NCBI RefSeq assembly: GCF_964188315.1
Contig: NC_135659.1
Span: 50,282,001 to 50,346,000, forward strand
DNA: 64,000 nucleotides
Direction of reading: 5' to 3'
Origin: Podarcis muralis
Lineage: Eukaryota
Made by a program: the position numbers and the translations under genes. Position 1 is the first letter of the stretch, and each line of letters starts with the position of its first letter. The notes under the pieces were generated by a model. It ran no database searches, had not been told where the DNA came from, and saw only the letters and a list, made by a program, of their open reading frames with translations. Positions 1,323-51,800 of the stretch are shown here, piece by piece.

Positions 1323-5948
<4,626 letters not shown>

Positions 5949-5972
5949 ACAGTCATTGTATCTAATGTGCTG

Positions 5973-5978
5973 AATAAA
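5973..5978 (+). terminator. RPS8 polyadenylation signal
   Basis: AATAAA 25 nt after the stop codon, with GT/T-rich sequence downstream. Confidence 0.85.
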
Positions 5979-8466
5979 TACCTACAGAGTCTTGTATAAA
6001 TGATTGATGTGTTTATTTATGGATAGTGAGGCAAAGACTTGAGTATGGTTTACTGCGACCATGTGAACGTGTTGGTTGCTAGCGAGGAGCTCACACCTAC
6101 TTTGCTTTCCCCCAGGATTTTTAAGTGCTATGGGATGAAAGCTAATGCAAGGTCTGTCTTAATATGTCTTCTGAACCTGGGGTCCTAGTTAGGGTTTCTC
6201 CTTAACCATGATCTGTAGCTAAGGTTTGTCCTGTGGTTAAGGAGGAGAGACTTTAACCAGGATTCTGGGTTTGGACAAAATACTAAGCCAGACATTTGCT
6301 TAGCTGCTGTTCTACATTGATATTTAAAGCCCAGGGAGCAGTTGCAACCTCCTGTTTGGGAGCTAGTGCATTCACACTTAAGTATGTTTGTATGGAAGTT
6401 TTTTTAAAAAAATGAGTGAAAGTTGTTTGACTTGGAAGCGTTATCCGTGTTAAAAAGCACATGCTGTTTTAATGGTAGGGTCAGGCTTTTCCTTCCCACT
6501 ATACTAAAATGCCACCCTTGGAGCTGTGATTTTGGCAGGCAGGATTGCTGAATGAGATTCTTCACGGTGTAGAATTGGTGGTTTCCATCTGCCATCAGGC
6601 ATGCCTACTAATACTACTCCCTCCAACATGCATTAAGGGGGTGTGGGTTCACCTTTGTTTAGAATAGTAAATAAGTAACTAAGGACTTAATGACCATCAA
6701 CCTGCCATGGCTGTTTCATTTGTTGAGTATTCTGTAGTATAACAGCAGCAATGTCAGCAAAGTTTTGCTTTGCATTTACTTCTTTGCTAAATTGCCCAGT
6801 TCTTAAAGCTAATAACTGTCAAGTTTCCCTGAATAGGGTTGGAGCTCTATACTTAGTTATAATGAACTCTCATTATACAGTATGGCGCTATAAATGTCAG
6901 CAGCACAGGTGTGTTGTCTTCTATTTGTTCTCCCAGTTCCCTTGCAACATGAGCTTTGTAGTGTACACTTCAAAATATCCTGCTTTTGGTGGCCCCATGG
7001 AGAACAGATTTTCAGAGTCTTCATCCTCTTCCAATGCATAGCATATATTTCTAATGATTAGGTATGTGCACAGGGTATTAATGAATGGAAGCTGAGAAAA
7101 TTATTAATGCGTTTGTTGTTGGCAGTTGAACTGCCAAAATTGGAAGCTGTTAGTTGAATTTTTTACATTATTATTACTACATTTAGCGACAAAACAACTG
7201 GTGCACTGCTAAGTGTCTAGATTGTCTTCTTCGTGACATTCTGGTCTCATTCCAGTGCAAGATTAACTCCCTTCTAGCAGAAGGGCCAGGCCTCTTTCCA
7301 AAAGTCTGGTCCTTTCGAAGGCTGGGAACAATACTATCTTCTAACAAGATACATTTTCATCAGTTTGAGAGGGTAAGGACAAGTTCTATGAATGGGAGCA
7401 TGGATCTCTTTAGAACATACCAGACAAATAAATGGTTTGCTTATATGGGTTTGGACAGATAGCAAATCTCCAGACTTCCACATAACTTTACAGAAAGCAT
7501 ATGCAGCTAGATACAGTGCTCATCCCACTACTAAAATTTTACAGTAATAGTCTAAAATCAAAGTTGGAGTTAACTTTTATTCAGGAGATTATCCTAAGGA
7601 AGTTATTTTGTGTGTATAGCTCTAGGAATGCTCATGGTCAGATTGCAATGCTTTCATTCATAGCCCCTTCTCAGGCTGCACTTTCAAATATGCTTACTAA
7701 GAAGTAAGCCCCATTGACCTATTTACTAATAAATATGCATATTTATACTAATATGAGGAGGGGGAGAGTAATCCTGTACATGCTTACTCAGAAGTAAATT
7801 ATTTTGAGTTCATTAACTCAGGTAAATAAGTATAGGATTGCAGCCTTACAATAAACATTTTGAAAGTAAGCTTTGAATTTGTTTCATTGTGCTTCCCTAG
7901 AATTTCCTCCAATATTTCAGCTTAACCACACACATTTCTCTATTGAAAAAACCTTTCAGCTATTTATACAGCATGTAAAATTAACATTTCTTAGATTTGT
8001 TCGATAAATATAAATAAAATAAACTAAAATCTTCAACTGAGTGCTGATTCCAAAAAGCTGCATCACTGCAAGTACCTGTTTATTCAAGCTTTTTTTTACC
8101 TGGTTCAAGGACAACCCTGCTAGATAAAAGGATGATGTTTGTATGTGTGTGCATATGTCTACTTTCTTCCTATTTCAGGGCCCACAAGGTAATTTCAGTG
8201 TGGAAACACTGCTTCGCAGCATGTGTTTGGGCTAAACAAATATTTCAAATCCATAGATTGTTCCTACCCATAGGCGGTTGTCTTGGAGATATTTCTCGAG
8301 TGTGTGACTTTCAATATGAGAATGGGCAGCTGCAAATCTTTGGCATTAGTGTTTTTATCCCTTAATGTATGCATGGTCAGATAGGGCAAGTTTCTCTTGT
8401 ATGTACTGGACCCATGTGGCTTGAGTGGGACATTAGTCCTAAATTCTGCCTTAAAAGGATTGGGCC

Positions 8467-19028: not shown

Positions 19029-20243
19029 TTGTTGTTGTTTAGTCATTTAGTCATGTCCGACTCTTCGTGACCCCATGGACCAGAGCACGCCAGGCACTCC
19101 TGTCTTCCACTGCCTCCCACAGTTTGGTCAGACTCATGTTGGTAGCTTCGAGAACATTGTCCAACCATCTCATCCTCTGTCGCCCCCTTCTCTTTGTGCC
19201 CTCCATCTTTCCCAACATCAGGGTCTTTTCAAGGGAGTCTTCTCTTCTCATGAGGTGGCCAAAGTATTGGAGCCTCAGCTTCACGATCTGTCCTTCCAGT
19301 GAGCACTCAGGGCTGATTTCCTTAAGAATGGATAGGTTTGATCCCCTTGCAGTCCATGGGACTCTCAAGAGTCTCCTCCAGCACCATAATTCAAAAGCAT
19401 CAATTCTTCGGCGATCAGCCTCCTTTATGGTCCAGCTCTCACTTCCATACAACACTACTGGGAAAACCATGGCTTTAACTATACAGACCTTTGTTGGCAA
19501 GGTGATGTCTCTGCTTTTTAAGATGCTGTCTAGGTTTGCCATCGCCTTTCTCCCAGGGAGCAGGCTTCTTTTAATTTCGTGACTGCTGTCACCATCTGCA
19601 GTGATCATGGAGCCCAAGAAAGTAAAATCTCTCACTGCCTCCATTTCTTCCCCTTCTATTTGCCAGGAGGTGATGGGACCAGTGGCCATGATCTTCGTTT
19701 TTTTGATGTTGAGCTTCAGACCATATTTTGCGCTCTCCTCTTTCACCCTCATTAAAAGGTTCTTTAATTCCTCCACACTTTCTGCCATCAAGGTTGTGTC
19801 ATCTGCATATCTGAGGTTGTTGATATTTCTTCTAGCAATCTTAATTCTGGCTAGCAATTCATCCAGCCCAGCCTTTCACGTGATGAATTCTGCATATAAG
19901 TTAAATAGGCAGGGGGACAATATACAGCCTTGCCATACTCCTTTCCCAATTTTTAACCAATCAGTTGTTCCATATCCAGTTCTAACTGTAGCTTCTTGTC
20001 CTACATAGAGATTTCTCAGTGGACAGATGAGGTGATCAGGCACTCCCATTTCTTTAAGAACTTGCCATAGTTTGCTGTGGTCGACACAGTCAAAGGCTTT
20101 TGCATAGTCAATGAAGCAGAAGTAGATGTCTTTCTGGAACTCTCTAGCTTCCTCCATAATCCAGCGCATGTTTGCAATTTGGTCCCTGGTTCCTCTGCCT
20201 CTTCTAAATCCAGCTTGCACTTCTGGGAATTCTCGGTCCAAAT
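19029..20243 (-). mobile_element. 5'-truncated BovB LINE (about 1.2 kb) with 12-bp TSD
   Basis: RT C-terminal ORFs (19876-20241; 19051-19857 with YADD), (CAA)n tail, TSD ATTACAGCTAAT at 19017-19028 and 20244-20255. Confidence 0.95.
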
Positions 20244-23025: not shown

Positions 23026-23509
23026 TGTCATAAGCAGAATGTTGCTGATCTAAATCTAATTTTTCAGTTCTTCTTCAAGATTAAAGCAAACTCACCTGTT
23101 TCCCACCTGTCCCTCTTGTTGTGACACAATTGTGGTTTGGATTGCATTAGGCTAAGTTGTGGTGGGTGGGTGGTATTGCCTGGTAGGACAGAGCATATTC
23201 CATAGTTGTAGATCTTTGATGAGAAGAGCATATTTTGCAGATATAGTAAGTCATTAATGTTGCGCCTGCTGAATGTCTGTCTCAATAGGCAAATCCCACC
23301 CAGTTGTTCCACAATGCCTCATTCTGAGTAAGGGTGCAGAAAAAGGAGGAGGTGGAGTGGCAGGGGCATCATTTGCTGGTCCTCCTCAGGTGGCAAAATG
23401 TCTTGGGCCATCTCCGTTCATATAACAGCAATACGAAAGCAAGAAAAAGACACGCTTTTGCATCTTTGTCAAACTCTTACAAAAGGTAGAACATAGCCAT
23501 TTATTCCAT

Positions 23510-23712
23510 AAAAAAATTCCTTCCAGTAGCACCTTAAAGACCAACTAAGTTAGTTCTTGGTATGAGCTTTCGTGTGCATGCACACTTCTTCAGATACACA
23601 CATGCACACGAAAGCTCATACCAAGAACTAACTTAGTTGGTCTTTAAGGTGCTACTGGAAGGAATTTTTTTTGTTTTGACTATGGCAGACCAACACGGCT
23701 ACCCATCTGTAA
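23510..23712. mobile_element. Penelope-like element terminal remnant (inverted pseudo-LTR pair) with 12-bp TSD
   Basis: about 70-bp perfect inverted arms (23510-23583 / 23601-23671) plus tail ...CCAACACGGCTACCCATCTGTAA; TSD CATTTATTCCAT at 23498-23509 and 23713-23724. Confidence 0.85.
23560..23597 (-). ncRNA. minimal type-I hammerhead ribozyme motif
   Basis: minus strand GTAT-CTGAAGA-A-GTGTGCATGCACAC-GAAA-GCTC/ATAC: stem I GTAT/ATAC, core CUGANGA and GAAA, palindromic stem II, palindromic AGCU stem III. Confidence 0.75.
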
Positions 23713-24148
23713 CATTTATTCCATGTTATTTACATTCCCCCCCGCCATACACTAGTATTCTTTTCTTCTCTTTTTGAAAGGGATGCAGTCCAGAAAGATC
23801 ATAGATTGAATAGTTTACTGCAAAAGTTAGATCAGGACAAAAATATATGTTAAGTCTTTTACATTCAGTGTATTGTGGTTTATAACGATGGGGAGTTAAG
23901 ATGCCAGTGTCTCTTTGGGAAGCAGGGCTGTCATGTGGAATACATTTATACAGCTATACATCTTGCTCTTGAGAAAACCGGGAAGCATTGCAACACGGTA
24001 GAAAGAGCTTTACAAGATCACAATTCAAGGACACAGTCTAACCAGGGGAAAGCACTTGAGGTGCCAGAGAGGTGCCAGGGGGCCAGAGAGAGAGATACGC
24101 ATTAGACACCCTGCAGGCCTGAGGTGCCTCATCCTCAGCCTAGAAGAG

Positions 24149-24265
24149 GGTTTCCCAAACTTGGGTCTCCAGCTGTTTTTGGACTACAATTCCCATCATC
24201 CCTGACCACTGTTCCTGCTAGCTAGGGATGATGGGAGCTGTAGTCCAACAACAGCTGGAGACCCT
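24149..24265. mobile_element. hAT-derived palindromic MITE (GGACTACAATTCCCATC family)
   Basis: GGGTCTCCAGCTGTT...AACAGCTGGAGACCC inverted arms around an internal CCCATCATCCCT/AGGGATGATGGG hairpin. Confidence 0.75.
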
Positions 24266-24439
24266 GGCCTAGACCCTGACAAAACCTGCTGAGGACATTT
24301 TATGCCTTGAGGTACAGTACGTTCTCTCTCTCAATTCCACATACACAATTAGATTGCTGGCAACTGAATTTTATCTTCACATTGGTGGCATCTCAGTCTC
24401 CTCTACAGCAGCTGATGGGGCAACACCCCTATGGGGAAA

Positions 24440-25260
24440 GGCTGCAGCATTTGAGACGTTTTAGGTGACATGGCAGAAGTTTATGAAATTATACATCATG
24501 TGAAGAAAGCGGATAGGAAAATGTTCTTTCTCTGTCGTAACATTAGAACTCGTGGACATCCAATGAGGCTGAATGTTGGAGGGCAGATAAAAGTGCTTCT
24601 TCATACAGTGCACAGTTAAGCTATGGAATTAGCTACCAAGAGGAGGCAGTGATGGTCACGAACTTAGGTGGCTTCAAGAAAGCATTAGACAAATATATGG
24701 AGGACAAGGCTATTGATGGCTAGTAGGCATGATGGTCCGTATAGTAAAAGGTATGGTTTCCCCAGTAGTGATGTATGGAAGTGAGAGCTGGACCATAAAG
24801 AAGGCTGATTGCCGAAGAATTGATGCTTTTGAATTATGGTGCTGGAGGAGACTCTTGAGAGTTCCATGGACTGCAAGAAGATCAAATGCATCCATTCTTA
24901 AGGAAATCAGCCCTGAGTGCTCACTGGAAGGACAGATCCTGAAGCTGAGGCTCTAATACTTTGGCCACCTCATGAGAAGAGAAGACTCCCTGGAAAAGAC
25001 CCTGATGTTGGGAAAGATGGAGGGCACAAGGAGAAGGGGGCGACAGAGGACGAGATGGTTGGACAGTGTTCTTGGAGCTACCAGCATGAGTTTGACCAAA
25101 CTGCAGGAGGCAGTGGAAAACAGGAGTGCCTGGCGTGCTCTGGTCCATGGGGTCACGTGGAGTCGGACACAACTAAACGACTAAACAACAACAACAAGCC
25201 ATGATGTGGTGCCTTTATAGTGCTGCCTTTATAGTCAGAGGCAGTAATGCTTATGAGAGC
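24440..25260 (+). mobile_element. CR1 3' end interrupted by a BovB insertion
   Basis: CR1 ORF2/3'UTR text 24440-24734 resumes at 25197 (GTCAGAGGCAGTAATGCTT). Confidence 0.7.
24735..25196 (+). mobile_element. BovB 3' fragment with TSD
   Basis: VRIVKGMVSPVVMYGSESW...; (CAA)n tail; TSD AGGCATGATG 24725-24734 / AGCCATGATG 25197-25206. Confidence 0.92.
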
Positions 25261-26543
25261 AGAAGCCCAGCTTAGGAAGCTTGGCACACACCACGTTGTC
25301 TACCAACTTCTTGCTACTGATCTGCACCCCCAGCATCTGCTACCTGAGGTACTTGCCTCTGTCTGGCAAATGGAAGGGCCGGTGCTGAGAAGGGGAATTC
25401 TGCCAGTTGTGGCTTCTCCTGCCAATGGCAGTCCTAAGGGGAAAACATGAAACAAGCACTCTCTCTGTGTGTGAGTTTCATATGTTGATTTCTACTAACC
25501 AGCCACTCTAGTTTCATTAACCTCTGTGCCACATAAATTTCTATGATGCTCAGCTGCTGAATCATAAAAGCAGAAGAGACCAAAACACCATCTTTAAAAC
25601 AAGAGGCAGGACCACCCACCCACCTACCTGTCACCCCAGATCAGGCTACATGTATAGCAAGTTCCATGAGAATAAACAGAAGGAAACGAATGCACTTAAC
25701 TTAGATCAGAGAAATGTTAATTGGATGTAGTGAAAATATGCTGAAAAAGTTTTTCAATGTTTTAGAAGGACGGCAGAAAGAAAGGTGGCTATGTGCAGAC
25801 CTCTCCACTAGATGTCACTCTCCTCCTTGCAGAGGAAACCTGAGCCTTTAAATAACTGGAGGAGATTCCTGGAATGCAGAGCCCATCTATGACTGGTGTT
25901 TGACAGGGAAAGAAACTGCAGAGACCAGCTCACACAGCAGAAAAGGAGGTCAGTGAAGAGGGTTTGGGGATTTAGGTGGGAGCTTCAGGCAAAGCCAGGC
26001 AGGGATATGTAATACCCCCCCCAAAAATCTAAAAATGCCAAAAAATTCTCTAAATAAAATGGAAGATTAAAAAATAATGGGCACAGCTGTTATCCTGTCC
26101 CAGTTTGCAACCTTCATCCCTGCTCATATGGGCTCCCCGCTGCCCCCAAGTCTTGTGTTCTGCATCTTATTTCCTGGAAGGAGGCTAGATCATGAGAAAT
26201 CTTCACCTCTACTGGAAACTGCAATGCAATTTTTTAAAAAATTAATTCTATCAAAGGGCTAGAAACCGCAGCTCATACTGTCCCTCCCTCACACCCCCCC
26301 AAACTGGAACAGACCCTAATACAAATGTTCTTCTAGGCATATTAATAACAACACCTGTGTCATTCCAAAGGCTCAGAAGAAAGAAGAACAAATCCTGGAA
26401 CACAAAATCATTTACAAGAGAACTCTCATTATTTGTGAAGTTTGCATAATGTTGGGAGCTGGTGGTCCTGCGGCCCCTTTCATAAACTGGATAAGAATTA
26501 GCCTATTTTGTGTTCTTATCATACTATGGATCAACAAGCAGCC

Positions 26544-27784
26544 TCAGCAAAGGTCAATATTCTCATATTCCATGTGGTCCGAGTCCTCCAGTTCAATGCC
26601 TGGAACCAGGTTGTAATAATCTACCGACTGGTTCATATAGAGCTTTTCACGGTCTGCAGAATCCTTCAGAACGTCTGTCACACTCACTGTCTCGGCTTCA
26701 GACTCCCCACCTGTGTAACCCTCCTCTGCAACGGTCGTTTTTTTGGATCCCGACTTATCTTGTTCAAGGCTTTCCCCATTGGCCTTCACCAAGGAATCAT
26801 CAGAAGCTCCCAGTTTGATCTCCACCTCTTCATAGAGGTCCCTGCTGCTCCCTAGTAGTGCAGCTGAAGGCTTAAGCAAGACCTGGTTCCTCAACAAGAT
26901 GTTCTTCTCGCTCTCTGCAGCTGATGCCATAGGCAGCTCACATGGCATGTAGCAGTGATGGTCCCCAGGCTCTTTGGAACCATTCCTCTCCACTGTAGCC
27001 AGCCGGCATTCCTTCCCAGCATGAGGATGGTAGCTGGTTTTCTTCTGCCGCTTGCAAAAGCACCAGGTGACCAGAACCAGAATAGCCACCACAGGCAGGC
27101 AAACAAAGAGAGCCGTTAGGCTATGGTTCCGGCACACCTCCTGCTTAGGGATATCTCTGAGATTCATGCCATGGTAACGTTCTGGGGTGCTACAAGCCAC
27201 CTCAACGTTCAATGGTGCAGGTAGGCATTTTTCCAGATCTTCAAGCAAGCTGCAAGTACAGTGCCAGCTGTTGTTGGAGAGACCTAGCGTGAGGAGGGAG
27301 GGTTTGAAAATCCCCGAGGGAAGGGAAGACAAGTTATTGAAGGCAAGGTGGATCTCCTGGATTTGGTCAGATGCTTTCAGGAATGACTCAGGCAGCTTCT
27401 GGAGTTGGTTGCTCTCCAAATGAATGACACGCAAGCTGGGTGCATTTCCTAGGAAACCATCTGGGAGCAAACTTAGCTGGTTATGGTCTAAGTGTAGAAT
27501 CTCCAATGTAGAAGAGCCATTCTCTGTGTTGATAATGTCTGATATGCCACAGTTTGATAGGTAGAGCTCCCTCAAACCCGCAGTTCCGGCGAAGATGCTC
27601 CAGTCCAAGGAGTTGATTTTAGTCCTGGTGAGATTCAAGCAACACATCTCAGGAGCCAATTTGGTCTGCAGTCCCTGGAAATCAACTTCTGCGCTGCAGT
27701 TGCACGTCTCTTCCAGAGCTCCTAACACGAGTTCTCTTGATAAGAGGACCACGCCAAAGAGTATGAGTGTCCACCTCTTCTGAC
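26544..27784 (-). CDS. LRR receptor main coding exon
   Basis: acceptor catctttttgctatag|GTCAGAAG at 27785/27784; open through the stop at 26544-26546 (ORF track 402 aa). Confidence 0.92.
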
Positions 27785-27969
27785 CTATAGCAAAAAGATG
27801 ACAAGCGTCAGTGATTTCTCACAGGTTACAGGCGGGAACTAGATGGCAACATTGTTCTTCCTGGTTCACTCACAGACATAACAGACAATAATCTGTGAAG
27901 TGCCATTGCCTCTAAATTGGATTCCAGTAGTTGTTCACTAAATTCACAAATAATGCATAGATATTTTTA

Positions 27970-28008
<39 letters not shown>

Positions 28009-39010: not shown

Positions 39011-39667
39011 GCCGCCTGGCCTCTGTTCTTTACCCAGGCTGCGAAATCCACCTTGTGATCACCTGCTGAAGAGTTCTGTGCAACTGGGAAGTTTGCACCA
39101 AGAGAAATTGATCCAATAGAACCTTCATCTTTTTTATATATATTTTAGATTCATGTTAGATATTCAAACGAATATGAATGTGTGTATGTATCATGTTTAC
39201 AGCTTCAGCTTTCAGGGTGTGGGTTTTGTATTACTATCATCATCAGTAATAATATTTGCATTCCTATTGTCTGCTTGACAACTTGGTATGTTCACCAGGA
39301 TACCTCAAGCCACTTATCTGGTCAAAATGATATATACAGTTGCCTATAAAGGCTTATCTCATTATGAAACCAGAGCAGTACCCACCAGAGAATTTACTGA
39401 GCTAGCCTCACGGGAATAAATGGAAGCAGTACAGCCAAAGCATTCATTTCAGAACTTGCTTGTGGGGACTAGATCCTTTGCCTCTAAGGGAATGCGCCTT
39501 TGGGAACCAGGACATTGAACTGGAGATTTAGAACAAGGCTGGAGAAATTATGGTCCTCAAGGTGTTGTTGGACTCCTAACACTGGAGAGCTATTGATACT
39601 CAGTGTGGTCTGTACAAGGCTAGAGAGATTGTTTTTAACCCTTTGGCATTCTAGTTACATTCTAGTT

Positions 39668-39734
39668 AAGCTCATACCAAGAACTAACTTAGTTGGTCTT
39701 TAAGGTGCTACTGGAAGGAATTTTTTTTGTTTTG
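39668..39734. mobile_element. Penelope-like terminal fragment with TSD
   Basis: AAGCTCATACCAAGAACTAACTTAGTTGG...GGAATTTTTTTTTGTTTTG matches the 23601 arm; CCTTTGGCATTCT at 39640-39652 and 39735-39747. Confidence 0.8.
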
Positions 39735-40612
39735 CCTTTGGCATTCTGTTATACATCTGACTTACATGGGAGGAAGGTGCATGAAAATAAATTATACTTC
39801 CAGGTGAGCAGAGGGGCAGGTGTGTCTGCGAGGGTGGGGGCCTGTCTGAGTCAGTGATTTCAGAGGCCATTTGTCTGCCCTGATGCCAGGATGTTTGTCC
39901 AGCCAGCGCAGCAGGAACATAGACACCCCATGGCTTATGGCCTCGAAAGCATGCACAATTCAAGTCCCTTTCCAATGATCCACCACCTAGCCTGGTTTTA
40001 CTGATTTATTAATTCTGAATCCCACACTGCAACATTAACCAGGGAGAAGCAATTCTGTTACAGTTTAACTCTGGGTGCTTTGCTTTACCCCCACCCCCTG
40101 TTAATCACCTTTTGCACACAGCTCCTTTTCTCTGCTAGCCCTTTTCCTTTACACAGGAATACTCTTTTCTCTCTGCACTCAGAGCCAAATGCACTCTTTC
40201 CCCTCTTTGCACAAGATCTGCATCCTTCCCTCACTTGTGCTACTATTATTCTCTTTCCCCATCTGCAGTTCTCATGACTTCCCCATTCACAGAACTTGCT
40301 GCTTTCCCAGACACGTCAAATATACATCCTCTTTCCTCCCGCCACTGCAAATAAATCACACCCTCTGCTCCTCATTGCACCTCATAGTACTACAGCAAAT
40401 ATCCCACCTCTATGTCACCCAACTTTTCTCTTTCTCCAGCCCCCAGGCCTCTCTCTACACCCTTATCTCTAAGCTTCTGTATTTGGTTTCTCTCTCTGCC
40501 CTACCAAGTTCAGTGGCAGTAGCCCACAGGGCTTTTGCTCTTCCAGCAACCCACGTGTTAAGGGAGATGCAAGATGGCCATGTCATGTGGCTGGCTCCTG
40601 TAACAGACTGGC

Positions 40613-46608: not shown

Positions 46609-48210
46609 CCCACTTTGGTAGTTTTAAAAATCCCTGTAAAAATATTTGGAGATCCGAATTAACCTTGGGGGTTGAAGAAAGGGCTTGTCCACACCAGAGT
46701 ACAATGTGGACCCCATCCCAGTGTTATATCACTCCCAAGGGCATACTTGGGGTTTGGCCAGGTTGGCTACTGCCAAGCATGCAGGCCCGGGGGGGGGGGG
46801 GTTGTGCCTCTCCCCTCTGACTTGGAGCCCGCCTGCCCTCCTGCACACTCCCCTTGAAAAAGCCCTTTTAAATGCAGGCTTTTCAATTCTGGCTATTTCA
46901 GACTTTACAGGTTGAAGCCATTACCCACAATTTTTTCCCCTCTATACCCATGTGTATACATATATACGTGTCTACTTAGGATTTCACTTTATGCATTTAA
47001 TATTGTGGAATCTAGTCCATGAACGTTTATGCCCTAATAAATTTGTTAGATTTTTAAGGCACCACAAGACTCCTCATTGCTTTCACAATGTGTTATCATC
47101 TTCTATTGTCCGCACATGAAGCCGGTCTTAAAAGGAAAGCTACAGGGACCTGATGAGAAGCTGGCAACCCTAGCAAAAAATCTCATGTTTGTCAAAGACG
47201 TTGTCACCCTCACCCCAGGATTTGTTTGCCTTGGAAACAAAGATTGCAGGAACGCATCCATTCCCACAACAGATATCAAAAGACAGGAAACCGCTAAGCT
47301 CCATTTGCCTTCCACATCCTAAACCCGTCCCATGCTGTAATTTATCTGGGTGTTTGCAATTAATTAGCTACACCACACAGAAGTGTGACTTTTGCTAGAC
47401 TTGCTCAAAATGAATCTCATCTGGGAAGAAAGGAGCAAGCAAAGTTCTGTACAATCCTTTGATTGGTCAGCAGAGGGCAGTGCCTTCCTGTCATTAATAT
47501 TGCTCATTCATTGCTGGGTGGAAACTTGGTACAGTATTTGCTTCCTGTGCTTTGGGACTGGGTCAGCAGCAACCCCTGGTGGAAATATATTGCAAAAAGT
47601 TTTCAGGTGGAAATATTTTAGAAATATTTTTTCTCCATCATCAGAAACAGATAATAAAACACAATTACACCTTTAACCCAACCCAGTACAGTAACAGCTT
47701 ATTCCTTTCAAGCAAGCCTCAGTCTGTCAGAATCTCTAAAGGCCTTCTTGATCTTTGGTGCACAATTGTAGTCAGTTCTGTATCCAAATAGCTTACCTGG
47801 TCCCCACACTTGCATGCCTAATATGATGGGTTTCAGACATATTTAAGCCAGGATTACAAACCTCAGTACCAGAGCTACATTACCCAAAGGCCTTGTTCAT
47901 TCTTTCCTTTGTGCCACTGCAGCACAAGCAGCTTTCAAAGACACAGAGACCGTTCAAAATAATTCCTACACATCACCACAAACATGCAAAAAGCACAAAT
48001 TAGCAGCATTTCAAAAACCATTGCCAAAACTTGCAGGAAGGATCCCTGCAGCAAATCAGTACCCAGAATCAGAAACCTCCACCTGCATGGCTCTTTGTCT
48101 TGGGATTTCACAGAGTTCTCAGTAGACCAACAGCTACTTCAGGGCTCAAATCACAGGGCACATCACAGCTATCTCTGCCCTCAAAACTTAGGCTTTATCC
48201 TTCTAACTAT

Positions 48211-48848
48211 TTACAGGTAGGTAGCCGTGTTGGTCTGGTGTAGTCGAAACAAAATAAAAAAATTCCTTCCAGTAGCACCTTTTGTTGTTGTTTAGTCGTT
48301 TAGTCGTGTCCGACTCTTCGTGACCCCATGGACCAGAGCACGCGAGGCACTCCTGTCTTCCACTGCCTCCCGCAGTTTGGTCAGACTCATGTTTGTAGCT
48401 TCGAGAACACTGTCCAACCATCTCGTCCTCTGTCGTCCCCTTCTCCTTGTGCCCTCCATCTTTCCCAACATCAGGGTCTTTTCCAGGGAGTCTTCTCTTC
48501 TCATGAGGTGGCCAAAGTATTGAAGCCTCAGCTTCACGATCTGTCCTTCCAGTGAGCACTCAGGGCTGATTTCCTTAAGAATGGATACGTTTGATCTTCT
48601 TGCAGTCCATGGGACTCTCAAGAGCACCATAATTCAAAAGCATCAATTCTTCAGCGATCAGCCTTCTTTATGGTCCAGCTCTCGCTTCCATACATCACTA
48701 CTGGGAAAACCATGGCTTTTACAATACGGACCTTAGTAGCACCTTAGAGACCAACTAAGTTTGTCATTGGTGTGAGCTTTCGTGTGCATGCACACTTCTG
48801 AAGAAGTTGGTCTCTAAGATGCTACTGGAAGGAATTTTTAAATTTTGT
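48211..48848. mobile_element. Penelope-like terminal remnant split by BovB, 13-bp TSD
   Basis: PLE text 48211-48281 and 48735-48848; TSD TCCTTCTAACTAT 48198-48210 and 48849-48861. Confidence 0.85.
48282..48734 (-). mobile_element. BovB 3' fragment with 11-bp TSD
   Basis: TSD AGTAGCACCTT 48271-48281 and 48735-48745; (CAA)n tail. Confidence 0.93.
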
Positions 48849-51800
48849 TCCTTCTAACTATATTAGAGCTGGAGAAAAGGCCCCACTCATTTGCCAATCT
48901 GGCACAGAGCCCCCCTCTTCTTTGCTCTCTTAATTACCCTTTCCTTTTCCTTTTCCTTTTCCCTTTCCTTTCCCTTTCCTTTATGGCTCATCACCCAGGC
49001 AATTACCTGAAGCTAGCCTGGCTTCATTTTAACACTTGTTGGTTCCAGGGGTTGGAAGGGGTCTCATCTCGTAACATTATGAACCTGCTTCTTCAGGCAG
49101 TGTGAGAAAAATTGCATTCAGAAAAGGTATCTCCTCAAGTGTTTCACTGAGTGGCCATTATTTTGTGTTATTATTACATATTTAAATGGCTGAGCTACCT
49201 TCCATTTCCCTCCATACAGGTCTGTAGATTGCATGCTGTAATAAACACACTTCACCTAGCATCCTCCAGATATTTTGGACTATGACTCCCATCAGTCCCA
49301 GTCAGCACCTGCTGGCTGCAGTTGATGGAGGGTGTGGTCTATTGGAGGGTGCCAGGATGGCAAAGGCTGCTATAATTGCATGAGTTTTCCCACTAAGTTA
49401 GCTGAATAGAAGAGTGAGGTGTCCAGAAAAGGGAAAATAGCCGTATTCACACTGCTTTCTGACCCAGGTGTGGAGAACTGAGATAGAGCAATAGTTTGGA
49501 AATTGGGATCACTTCCAGACAGCTTGATTACAGAGCATTCATTCTTGTTTGTTTGTATACAGGTTAGATGGTTCAATCAAGTGTTAGCCAGTACATTTCT
49601 CCCATCACTTTCCCTATAGCAAAAAGTCTGATTTCCTGAGGAAGTGTGATTGTTGCACAAGAGTTCCAAATCAACTGCAATTGGCTAGCCTGAATTTAGC
49701 AGTAAGTGGTTGAATCCCCCTGGAAAATAGCTGTCTAGAAGCACCCAGACTCCATGCAGGTGGGAGGTTCTCTGAGAACTGAACAAACTTCAGACAACAA
49801 AAGTTAAGGTCAAGTGGCTCTCTACAGATAATTTTCCTTCTGCTTACACTAAACACAGTGGCAAGGGTGATAGACACAGGGACTTTTAAATAGTTCTATC
49901 ATTTCCAATGACTGTGTCGTTGCAACAAAACCAGCACAGGTTTAGACTATTCTCTTAAAGGATATTTGCATGGTCAGGGCAAAGGAGGACAGGGCCTCTG
50001 TGGTGCAGAAGCAGGGATGTTGGCCAATGCAACTGGTAAGGCACTTGACAATGTGCTTTTCCTTTGCCTCTAGGTGGCATAAAGTATTGTACAGTTGCAT
50101 CTGGCACTTTTAGGCCAGTGTTTCTACGTATAACTGGAAAAGCAGGAACATTCCCTAGAACATGTGCATACTTTTGCTTCTGGGGTGTTCTGAAGTACTG
50201 ATACTGGAAAGCTGTCTCTGCGAACGCCACAACCCCCACTTGCCTTGTGCGGTCACTTGAAAGCCATGCAGATGGGTAGGGACCCAACACACGCTAAAGA
50301 TCACAGCACAAATGGATTGTAGAAATTGGATGTACTGCATCGACAGACACATAAAACCACCACTCCCATTGGCACCATGAAGAAGTTGGTTTGGTATTAC
50401 AACATGTCTGCAGGGACAAACAATGCTGTCATCCTCCTCCTCCCCCGCCACCATGTGAAAGCAGACAGTGATGAAAGAGAAGCCATAACTGGTCCTTCAC
50501 CCGTGGTATGAATAGCTTCGCAGTAGACACGATAAACATCCATACCAGCAAGCTGGTTCAACCACTAGACTTGCCTTACTTAGGATTCAGGTAGATTGCC
50601 TGCTTTGTTCTACAAAACTTTCTCTTTCTTTCTTTCTTCATGTTATATTAAACAGCTAAAAAAATGCTCTGGCGACTGGGGAGGGTGGTGTATTGATGAT
50701 GTTATAAAAACTAGCCAACTGGTGCTTCCCCCACCCCCACCTGGCTTTTCCCCACTTCTGTACTCTCTCCCTTCTGACCCAGTCTGCACAAATTGCTCAG
50801 AGGGGAGAGCGCAAGAGAAGTGGAGGAGGCTGCTCTGTGTCCTCTTTCTTGCATTGCTCAGAGAGGGTAGGTGAACCGACAGCGACACTGCAGAGGAGGG
50901 CCATGAGGCCTGGAGTGTGGCAGTGGGCTTGCAGCAGGGATGTGGGCCTTGTCAGGTGCCCAGTAACTCCTGTCTCTGATGCAAGTCCAGATTCTGTAGG
51001 AGATAAGTTATCAGTGGGGTGCCCACGGGTACCTGTGTGCCCACCAGCAAAGGCCATGATACCCACAAAAGGTCTTAGTAAATATCCCCTCAAAAATCTA
51101 CAGTGCAGAAGAAGTTGCTATTCCTGCTTAGTTTCTGTTTGCCTTGGCTCAGCCTCTCTTACATTGAATATGTCATTGGATGCTAAAGCTGGATACCCCT
51201 CCCTCCTAGTCTCAGGTGCAAAGAGTTTCCTTCTGGATTCACAGAATAGTGGCTGGTGTAGGTGCCTTCCGGCCCACTGCCACCACAACTGATGGGAACA
51301 TGCAATCTTGTGGCAGCATCTTTTTCTGCATTTTTAGATGTGGCAGTCGTATATTTTTTTATGCCACAGCCTCATGGCAGCCATTCTGTGACTGGTGTCC
51401 ACAACACTTTCTCAAAGCTCCAAATGTGTCCATTGCCCCCCCCCCCAAAGATTGTCAATCTCTGCTATAGTATATTAGATGACAAGGTGCATTGATTCCC
51501 CATATCTTCAGACATGAGCATCATGGGGGAAAGTCACAAAGGAAAACAGGTGTGCCCAATTTTTTGTGTGACTTTATATGCCCAGGATCTGGTTTGAGAG
51601 GCAAAACTGCACATGGAAGAAACATATCCTGAAGGATGCTAAGCAAGATGCTGGGCAGAATCTAAATATCAGCATATAAACTGGAAGCAGGGTAGCTCCA
51701 GTAATTTCTTATCTCTCATTTGTTTTATTCTTTGAACAGTAAATAACAATGCTCTTTTCTACACAATTTTATTTTGCACATATATTTTTTTAGTTTTTGG

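What the first reader, a model, noticed from the sequence alone, without database searches (positions are those of the whole stretch)
23498..23724. Penelope-like remnant carrying an intact minimal hammerhead ribozyme inside a long inverted repeat
Seen: TSD-bounded element with about 70-bp perfect inverted arms. The minus strand at 23560-23597 has all hammerhead core elements (CUGAAGA, stem II, GAAA, palindromic AGCU helix III, CUC cleavage triplet, 4-bp stem I), with predicted cleavage between 23564 and 23563. One extra A follows the CUGANGA box. Established: Penelope-like elements encode minimal type-I hammerheads whose palindromic helix III favours dimeric folding. Inference: the ribozyme is on the same strand as the LRR gene and BEST4. 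The truncated inverted arm would pair with its 3' half, so this could be a self-masked ribozyme or a dsRNA hairpin substrate.
Basis: partly seen in the sequence, partly recalled or inferred. Interest (0 to 1): 0.7.

Follow-up and report, generated by a model that had tools for sequence, protein, structure and literature searches.

The report
Truncated Penelope-type insertion with hammerhead motif
This is a short, young, dead-on-arrival copy of a lizard Penelope-type jumping gene whose small self-cutting RNA motif and hairpin shape are both standard, already published features of such insertions, so it is a clean specimen and not a new phenomenon.

Summary
A 203-bp insertion (23510-23712) lies between perfect 12-bp target-site duplications. 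It has 71-nt perfect inverted arms and a 20-nt spacer. The minus strand (23597-23560) holds a complete minimal type-I hammerhead motif; a descriptor finds it once in the window and never in 300 shuffles.

None of this is unusual. The "extra A" after CUGAAGA, the G10.1-C11.1 pair, the palindromic AGCU helix III, the long helix II and the 4-bp helix I are the published hallmarks of Penelope-like-element (PLE) minimal hammerheads. The inverted 5'-truncated copy plus a one-sided 41-nt "tail" is the published PLE insertion layout. Two more copies of the family lie in this window, one with the same inverted-arm layout. Earlier scan notes (unchecked) report the layout many times elsewhere in this genome.

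The hairpin is predicted at -138.8 kcal/mol and buries the 3' half of the ribozyme. Forcing helices I and II costs about 35 kcal/mol, and no partner motif for dimer formation is nearby, so cleavage in cis is unlikely.

The motif shares a strand with the upstream LRR gene and downstream BEST4, but lies between them. Verdict: ordinary PLE remnant, low interest.

The parts
23498..23509 (.). Left target-site duplication, CATTTATTCCAT. On the minus strand it contains AATAAA.
   Evidence: family D2, 12/12 identical
23510..23600 (-). Secondary, inverted 5'-truncated copy of the element (sense on the minus strand). It runs from 3 nt upstream of hammerhead helix I to the T-run and lacks the tail. It comprises inverted-repeat arm 23510-23580 plus the 20-nt spacer 23581-23600.
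23560..23597 (-). Complete minimal type-I hammerhead motif: helix I 4 bp, CUGAAGA, bulged A, helix II 5 bp, GAAA, palindromic AGCU, C17. Predicted cleavage is between 23564 and 23563.
   Evidence: features compared with PMC4209133
23601..23671 (+). Main copy (sense on the + strand), 5'-truncated inside hammerhead helix II. It keeps only the 3' half of the motif and forms the second inverted-repeat arm.
23672..23712 (+). One-sided 41-nt 3' 'tail' extension, present on this arm only. The same tail is found at the constant end of copy 2 (48211-48255, minus sense).
   Evidence: tail concept from PMC8557442
23713..23724 (.). Right target-site duplication, CATTTATTCCAT.
39668..39735 (+). Third copy of the family. 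It starts inside the hammerhead (at AGCUC), is identical to copy 1 over about 66 nt, and has no inverted arm and no long tail. It is flanked by a 13-bp direct repeat, CCTTTGGCATTCT.
48211..48848 (-). Second, older copy with TSD TCCTTCTAACTAT at 48198-48210 and 48849-48861. It has the same tail at the constant end, a short inverted arm (48798-48848) at the variable end, a nested BovB-like insertion at about 48282-48735, and no complete hammerhead on either strand.

Best explanation
A young, non-coding, 5'-truncated insertion of a Penelope-like-element (PLE) type retroposon. Inferred mechanism: the element's endonuclease made a staggered break, which gave the 12-bp TSD. Reverse transcription was then primed on both DNA ends. 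On the minus strand it started from the RNA's true 3' end, producing the 41-nt tail and then the main copy. On the plus strand it started from an internal U-run of the same or a second RNA, producing the tail-less inverted copy, which ran 20 nt further towards the RNA's 5' end. Joining the two cDNAs left a 71-bp perfect inverted repeat with a 20-nt spacer. The hammerhead motif is a passenger from the element's terminal-repeat region. In a live PLE it is thought to process tandem-unit transcripts as a dimer. Here it is single, has no partner, and in any transcript crossing the locus its helix II 3' strand, GAAA box, helix III, cleavage site and helix I 3' strand are locked in the hairpin. It is therefore most likely catalytically silent, and the locus has no host function. 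Shown: the anatomy, the match to the motif, the recurrence in the window and the predicted energetics. Inferred: the two-primer mechanism, inactivity and neutrality.
For: The descriptor hit is unique in the window, with 0 of 300 shuffles matching. [quoted passage not shown] Craig et al. 2021 describe PLE insertions as highly 5'-truncated, often with an inverted 5'-truncated copy adjacent and a 30-40-bp tail at one end only; here the tail is 41 nt. The three family copies in the window share one constant end (the tail) and have variable other ends, with TSDs of 12-13 bp. Two of the three have an inverted arm ending in the same U/T-rich tract. The hairpin MFE is -138.8 kcal/mol, z = -20.7. The pair probability of hammerhead helices I and II in the 227-nt transcript is 0, and enforcing them costs 35.3 kcal/mol. 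Even the isolated 46-mer prefers a misfold: -9.0 against -1.1 kcal/mol for the hammerhead-like fold. No second hammerhead lies in the 64 kb. The literature reports no detectable cleavage by single PLE minimal hammerheads and low activity even as dimers.
Against: No reverse transcriptase or GIY-YIG ORF is linked to this copy or to any copy in the window. The only RT in the window is an RVT_1 fragment that looks BovB/RTE-like by eye. PLE membership therefore rests on the motif and the insertion layout, not on a tested link to an autonomous element. No Dfam or RepeatMasker tool was available. The Rfam hammerhead models do not match. Co-transcriptional folding and protein chaperones are not modelled, and activity was not measured. 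The two-primer model is not distinguished from other ways of making the junction.
Confidence: 0.88

Rival explanations
1. The hairpin is a functional RNA or DNA element co-opted by the host. Read-through or 3'-UTR transcripts of the LRR receptor gene would carry a 71-bp perfect dsRNA that is diced, edited or sensed. Alternatively, the insertion altered 3'-end formation by duplicating the gene's poly(A) signal.
For: The motif is on the same strand as the LRR gene, 2.8 kb downstream of its stop codon. The only AATAAA or ATTAAA hexamers on the minus strand between 27971 and 23300 are the two inside the TSD copies. The hairpin is very stable.
Against: A PAS-free stretch of this length is only weakly unusual (P about 0.07), and several variant hexamers are present. 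If the first AATAAA is used, cleavage would fall in the element's tail and the hairpin would be excluded from the mature mRNA. No expression, small-RNA or editing data could be obtained. The arms are perfect because the insertion is young, not because they are conserved. The same layout arises at other insertions.
Confidence: 0.05
2. The hammerhead is catalytically active in vivo at this locus and cuts minus-strand transcripts at 23564/23563. This could happen in trans as a dimer with transcripts of other family copies, or during a co-transcriptional window.
For: All core nucleotides and family hallmarks are intact. PLE minimal hammerheads do cleave weakly as dimers in vitro.
Against: The masking arm is transcribed before the ribozyme on the minus strand, so the hairpin can zip up as the ribozyme emerges. 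Opening it for helices I and II costs 35 kcal/mol. The isolated motif misfolds, and the computed MFE dimer pairs through the palindromic helix II instead of through AGCU. Single motifs showed no activity in the literature. There is no partner in the window.
Confidence: 0.03
3. It is a MITE or foldback-type DNA transposon with terminal inverted repeats, not a retroposon.
For: It is short, non-coding, TSD-flanked and has long inverted repeats.
Against: The inverted repeat is not terminal on the right side, where 41 unpaired nt lie inside the TSD. TSD length varies between copies (12 and 13 bp). Copy 3 has no inverted arm. The copies share one constant end and have variably truncated other ends, which is the signature of target-primed reverse transcription.
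Confidence: 0.02
4. The palindrome is an assembly artefact.
For: PLE tandem and inverted structures are known to trouble assemblies. Raw reads could not be inspected.
Against: The whole structure is only 203 bp. It sits between perfect TSDs in unique flanks. A diverged copy with the same layout exists at 48.2-48.8 kb.
Confidence: 0.02

Closest known systems
Minimal hammerhead ribozymes (min-HHR) of metazoan Penelope-like elements (Cervera & de la Pena 2014, PMC4209133)
   Same: Type-I topology. CUGANGA and GAAA boxes. An unpaired nucleotide between A9 and G10.1. A G10.1-C11.1 pair. Helix III reduced to a palindromic AGCU that can only pair between two molecules. Helix II longer and helix I shorter than in canonical hammerheads. 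Mostly dispersed as single motifs in truncated copies, sometimes as pairs on opposite strands 100-700 bp apart.
   Different: Nothing in the motif itself differs. Here the second, opposite-strand copy is truncated inside helix II, so only one strand carries a complete motif. Self-cleavage was not tested.
PLE insertion architecture: pLTR, inverted 5'-truncated copy and one-sided tail (Evgen'ev & Arkhipova 2005 and Arkhipova 2006, as summarised in Craig et al. 2021, PMC8557442)
   Same: Strong 5' truncation. TSD of variable length. An inverted 5'-truncated copy abutting the 5' end. A 30-40-bp extension at one end only (41 nt here).
   Different: This copy is extremely short (132 nt of unique element sequence). 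It has no ORF, no direct pseudo-LTR and no tandem unit.
L1 5'-inversion by twin priming (from my own knowledge, not tested here)
   Same: Two cDNAs primed from the two ends of one staggered break, giving an inverted 5' segment within one TSD pair.
   Different: L1 inversions normally show little or no overlap between the two segments. Here the segments overlap by 71 nt and so form a hairpin. A GIY-YIG endonuclease is presumed to act in place of an AP-type one.
Animal non-LTR retrozymes (Cervera & de la Pena 2020, PMC7229834; Li et al. 2026 preprint, 10.64898/2026.07.22.740005)
   Same: Non-coding hammerhead-bearing retroposon sequence related to PLE terminal repeats.
   Different: Retrozymes are tandem repeats with canonical type-I hammerheads that have loop-loop contacts, and they give circRNAs. 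Here there is a single minimal motif, no tandem unit and no evidence of circles.

Membership tests
PLE minimal hammerhead (min-HHR) | Conserved core: CUGANGA, GAAA, U16.1 and H17 in type-I order | tested here: met
   CUGAAGA ... GAAA-GC-U-C on the minus strand, 23593-23564
PLE minimal hammerhead (min-HHR) | [quoted passage not shown] | tested here: met
   A at 23586 (bulge = 1); named as a hallmark in PMC4209133
PLE minimal hammerhead (min-HHR) | G10.1-C11.1 closing pair, helix II longer than canonical, helix I 4-5 bp | tested here: met
   G23585-C23572 plus four more pairs; helix I is 4 bp (23597-23594 with 23563-23560)
PLE minimal hammerhead (min-HHR) | Palindromic 15.2-16.2 with no loop 3, so that helix III forms only in a dimer | tested here: met
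   AGCU at 23568-23565
PLE minimal hammerhead (min-HHR) | Self-cleavage (weak, as a dimer) | not testable with these tools
   Only thermodynamic prediction was possible, and it disfavours the active fold here
Penelope-like element insertion | TSD of variable length, 5' truncation and one constant 3' end | tested here: met
   TSDs of 12 and 13 bp; the shared tail end at 23712 and 48211; variable other ends
Penelope-like element insertion | Adjacent inverted 5'-truncated copy and a one-sided 30-40-bp tail | tested here: met
   against the description in PMC8557442; the tail is 41 nt
Penelope-like element insertion | Derivation from an element encoding a TERT-like RT plus a GIY-YIG endonuclease | not testable with these tools
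   There is no such ORF in the window, and no repeat library or whole-genome access was available. Earlier scan notes report intact PLEs in this genome, but I did not check them.
Canonical type-I hammerhead (Rfam hammerhead families) | Match to the Rfam covariance models, which expect a stem III | tested here: not met
   No hammerhead hit at E <= 10 in 401 nt or in the isolated 53 nt. This is the expected outcome for minimal variants, which needed a dedicated descriptor in PMC4209133.
Non-LTR retrozyme | Tandem units delimited by hammerheads | tested here: not met
   One motif only in 64 kb; no direct repeat of the unit
MITE / foldback DNA transposon | Inverted repeats reaching both termini and a fixed TSD length | tested here: not met
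   A 41-nt unpaired tail lies inside the TSD; TSDs are 12 and 13 bp; copy 3 has no inverted arm
microRNA precursor families (mir-559, MIR8562, mir-3688 and others) | Score at or above the Rfam gathering threshold | tested here: not met
   Best scores were 63 bits against a threshold of 211, and 62 against 95. The matches reflect only the long perfect hairpin.

The most novel reading that the evidence does not exclude
The insertion landed in, and duplicated, the only canonical poly(A) signal downstream of the LRR receptor gene. Read-through transcripts would then carry a 71-bp perfect hairpin made of PLE sequence. That hairpin could alter the gene's 3'-end choice or stability, or it could serve as a dsRNA trigger for silencing the still-young PLE family, in the way a Mu-killer-type inverted copy does. 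Because the PLE insertion mechanism makes such hairpins routinely, the family might systematically seed its own RNAi triggers.
Probability: 0.04. Interest if true: 0.45.

Novelty: already known. Interest (0 to 1): 0.12.

Why it matters
It matters little on its own. It is a tidy small example of two published PLE features in one 203-bp insertion: the minimal dimer-dependent hammerhead and the inverted-copy-plus-tail insertion layout. It shows concretely that this layout buries the ribozyme in a hairpin. The junction falls inside the palindromic helix II, and both inverted arms in the window end in the same U-rich tract. These are small data points for whoever works out the still undefined PLE integration mechanism. 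For genome annotation, it warns that hammerhead hits in squamate introns and intergenic DNA are mostly such passengers. The scan has flagged this layout many times before on other DNA of the same genome.

Tried and rejected
- Rfam at gathering thresholds over the whole window found only the RPS8-intron snoRNAs.
- Rfam at E <= 10 over 401 nt gave only sub-threshold miRNA-hairpin look-alikes. Over the isolated 53 nt it gave nothing.
There is therefore no evidence on transcription, RNA ends, editing, small RNAs, read support for the palindrome or insertion polymorphism.
- Two exact-pattern scans of metagenome contigs for conserved parts of the element found nothing.
- A full-text search for four 17-20-nt words of the element found no paper.
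- The Lunse, Weinberg & Breaker paper on PLE hammerhead dimers is not held. No supplements of PMC4209133 are held. A direct sequence comparison with published reptile min-HHRs was therefore not possible.
- The search of earlier findings by sequence was blank.
- The MITE, miRNA-precursor, retrozyme and chance-motif readings were considered and rejected. See the rivals and the membership table.
- The ATG in the helix II loop opens only a 9-codon frame before a stop, read by eye, so no ORF starts in this hammerhead copy.

Full report
**Observation**

A 12-nt direct repeat (CATTTATTCCAT) lies at 23498-23509 and 23713-23724. Inside it are two 71-nt arms (23510-23580 and 23601-23671) that are 100% complementary, with 20 nt between them. 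The right arm is followed by 41 nt (23672-23712) that have no inverted partner.

On the minus strand the stretch 23597-23560 reads, in order:
- a 4-nt helix I strand;
- CUGAAGA;
- one A;
- a 14-nt palindrome that forms a 5-bp helix II with a 4-nt loop;
- GAAA;
- GC, U and C;
- the complementary 4-nt helix I strand.

Cleavage would fall 3' of C 23564.

I wrote a descriptor with these requirements: core boxes, an optional bulge, helix II of at least 4 bp, complementary positions 15.2/16.2, UH, and helix I of at least 4 bp. It matched once on both strands of the 64-kb window and never in 300 dinucleotide shuffles. The motif is therefore not a chance match.

**What it is**

Cervera & de la Pena (PMC4209133) defined the minimal hammerheads of metazoan Penelope-like elements. 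They list features that emerged beyond their search descriptor:
- a G10.1-C11.1 pair;
- palindromic 15.2-16.2, with loop 3 absent or palindromic;
- a helix II longer, and a helix I shorter (4-5 bp), than in canonical hammerheads.

All of these are present here. The same paper notes that most such motifs are dispersed as single copies in truncated elements. It also notes that pairs on opposite strands 100-700 bp apart occur, and that similar motifs occur in reptiles.

Craig et al. (PMC8557442) summarise PLE insertion structure as follows. There is heavy 5' truncation and variable TSD length. Often an inverted 5'-truncated copy abuts the 5' end. A 30-40-bp "tail" is often present at one end only. 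The insertion here has each of these, with a 41-nt tail.

**Other copies in the window**

The window itself gives independent support.

Copy 2, at 48211-48848, lies in the opposite orientation.
- It has its own 13-bp TSD (TCCTTCTAACTAT).
- It carries the same tail at its constant end.
- It has a short inverted arm at the other end, which stops in the same T-rich tract as the arm of copy 1.
- It is older, at 86-94% identity to copy 1.
- It carries a nested BovB-like insertion.
- It has no complete hammerhead on either strand.

Copy 3, at 39668-39735, is identical to copy 1 over about 66 nt. It starts inside the hammerhead and has no inverted arm.

One constant end, variably truncated other ends and TSDs of 12-13 bp are the signature of target-primed reverse transcription. 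They argue against a MITE or foldback DNA transposon.

**Which arm is which**

The copy that carries the tail is sense on the + strand (23601-23712). It is truncated inside helix II, so it keeps only the 3' half of the hammerhead. The complete motif belongs to the tail-less inverted copy, which is sense on the minus strand (23600 down to 23510). That copy begins 3 nt upstream of helix I and ends in the T-run.

The simplest mechanism is inferred, not shown. Both 3'-OH ends of one staggered break primed reverse transcription, one at the RNA's 3' end and one at the internal U-run. The two cDNAs were then joined. This resembles L1 twin priming except for the 71-nt overlap.

**How it would behave**

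As RNA, the 227-nt minus-strand stretch folds into the 71-bp hairpin at -138.8 kcal/mol (z = -20.7). In that ensemble the pair probabilities of hammerhead helices I and II are zero, and enforcing them costs 35.3 kcal/mol. The hairpin leaves helix I's 5' strand, the CUGAAGA box and helix II's 5' strand in the loop. It buries everything from helix II's 3' strand through the cleavage site.

On the minus strand the masking arm is transcribed first. Even as an isolated 46-mer the motif prefers a misfold, in which the upstream GUGUGUA pairs with helix II's 3' strand. That misfold scores -9.0 kcal/mol, against -1.1 for the hammerhead-like fold. The computed dimer pairs through the helix II palindrome and not through AGCU. 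There is no second hammerhead in the window to act as a dimer partner.

Published single PLE minimal hammerheads showed no detectable cleavage, and dimers cleaved only weakly. I therefore rate cleavage at this locus as unlikely.

**Context**

The window is the RPS8 - BEST4 - LRR gene - (PLK3) neighbourhood. Three lines of evidence place the insertion:
- RPS8-intron snoRNAs lie at 2.6-7.3 kb on the + strand.
- Bestrophin exons are on the minus strand, with the first coding exon near 16.9 kb.
- The LRR gene's last exon is at 26544-27752 on the minus strand.

The insertion is therefore intergenic. It lies 2.8 kb downstream of the LRR stop codon and about 6.6 kb upstream of BEST4's first coding exon, on the same strand as both genes.

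The only AATAAA or ATTAAA hexamers on the minus strand between 27971 and 23300 are the two in the TSD copies. This fits a sibling note that the target site may have been the LRR gene's poly(A) signal. However, such a gap is only weakly unusual (P about 0.07), and variant hexamers exist upstream. If the first copy is used, cleavage would fall in the element's tail and leave the hairpin out of the mRNA.

**Age**

There are zero differences in 71 arm positions and 12 TSD positions. At 0.7-2 x 10^-9 substitutions per site per year, this bounds the insertion at roughly less than 9-26 million years at 95%. The bound is weak. The identity with copy 3 suggests a recently active family.

**Comparison and novelty**

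The motif, its dimer logic, its weak activity, its location in PLE terminal repeats and the inverted-copy-plus-tail layout are all published. Rfam's hammerhead models miss it, as expected for minimal variants.

PLE membership is supported by the motif and the layout. It was not confirmed by a link to an RT/GIY-YIG element, which these tools could not test. No such ORF is in the window.

Earlier notes of this scan are unchecked by me. They call the genome a wall lizard and report this same self-complementary, "self-masking" hammerhead layout many times elsewhere in it, together with intact PLEs. The scan has thus found this before on other DNA.

**Verdict**

Noticed in passing
window 23300-27971, minus strand: This is a 4.25-kb stretch with no AATAAA or ATTAAA, running from inside the LRR gene's last exon region down to the TSD. 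The two TSD copies (hexamers starting at 23720 and 23505) are the first canonical poly(A) hexamers downstream of the LRR stop codon. It is the second-longest such gap in the window, and the probability of no hexamer in the 2.8 kb after the stop codon is about 0.07. The element's tail just downstream of the first copy is GU-rich, like a downstream element.
   Followed up: partly
window 48282-48735: A BovB-like 3' fragment is nested inside the older PLE-type copy, flanked by its own short duplication of the host element's AGTAGCACCTT. It shows the order of events: the PLE copy came first and the BovB fragment later.
   Followed up: no
window 19051-20241 (minus) and 24685-25204 (+): Both are fragments that look BovB/RTE-like by eye. 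The first carries RVT_1 (Pfam E = 1e-16 and 8e-10). The second, which I did not scan, lies in the LRR-BEST4 intergenic region.
   Followed up: partly
window 39640-39670: Copy 3 of the element is preceded by 16 nt (AGTTACATTCTAGTTA) between its left 13-bp direct repeat and the element's start. These may be untemplated, or a scrap of the antisense tail (GTTACA...). The right direct repeat resembles the element's own sequence at that point (GCCTTTGGCA against GACTATGGCA). This may mean microhomology-guided internal priming.
   Followed up: no
window 48795-48810: In copy 2 the junction between the main and inverted arms falls inside the CUGAAGAAG box. The inverted arm also lacks 39 nt relative to copy 1. 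This could be a template jump at insertion or a later asymmetric deletion in an unstable palindrome.
   Followed up: no
window 2640-7333, + strand: SNORD46, two SNORD38 copies and SNORA35 all score above their Rfam gathering thresholds, marking the RPS8 host gene.
   Followed up: no
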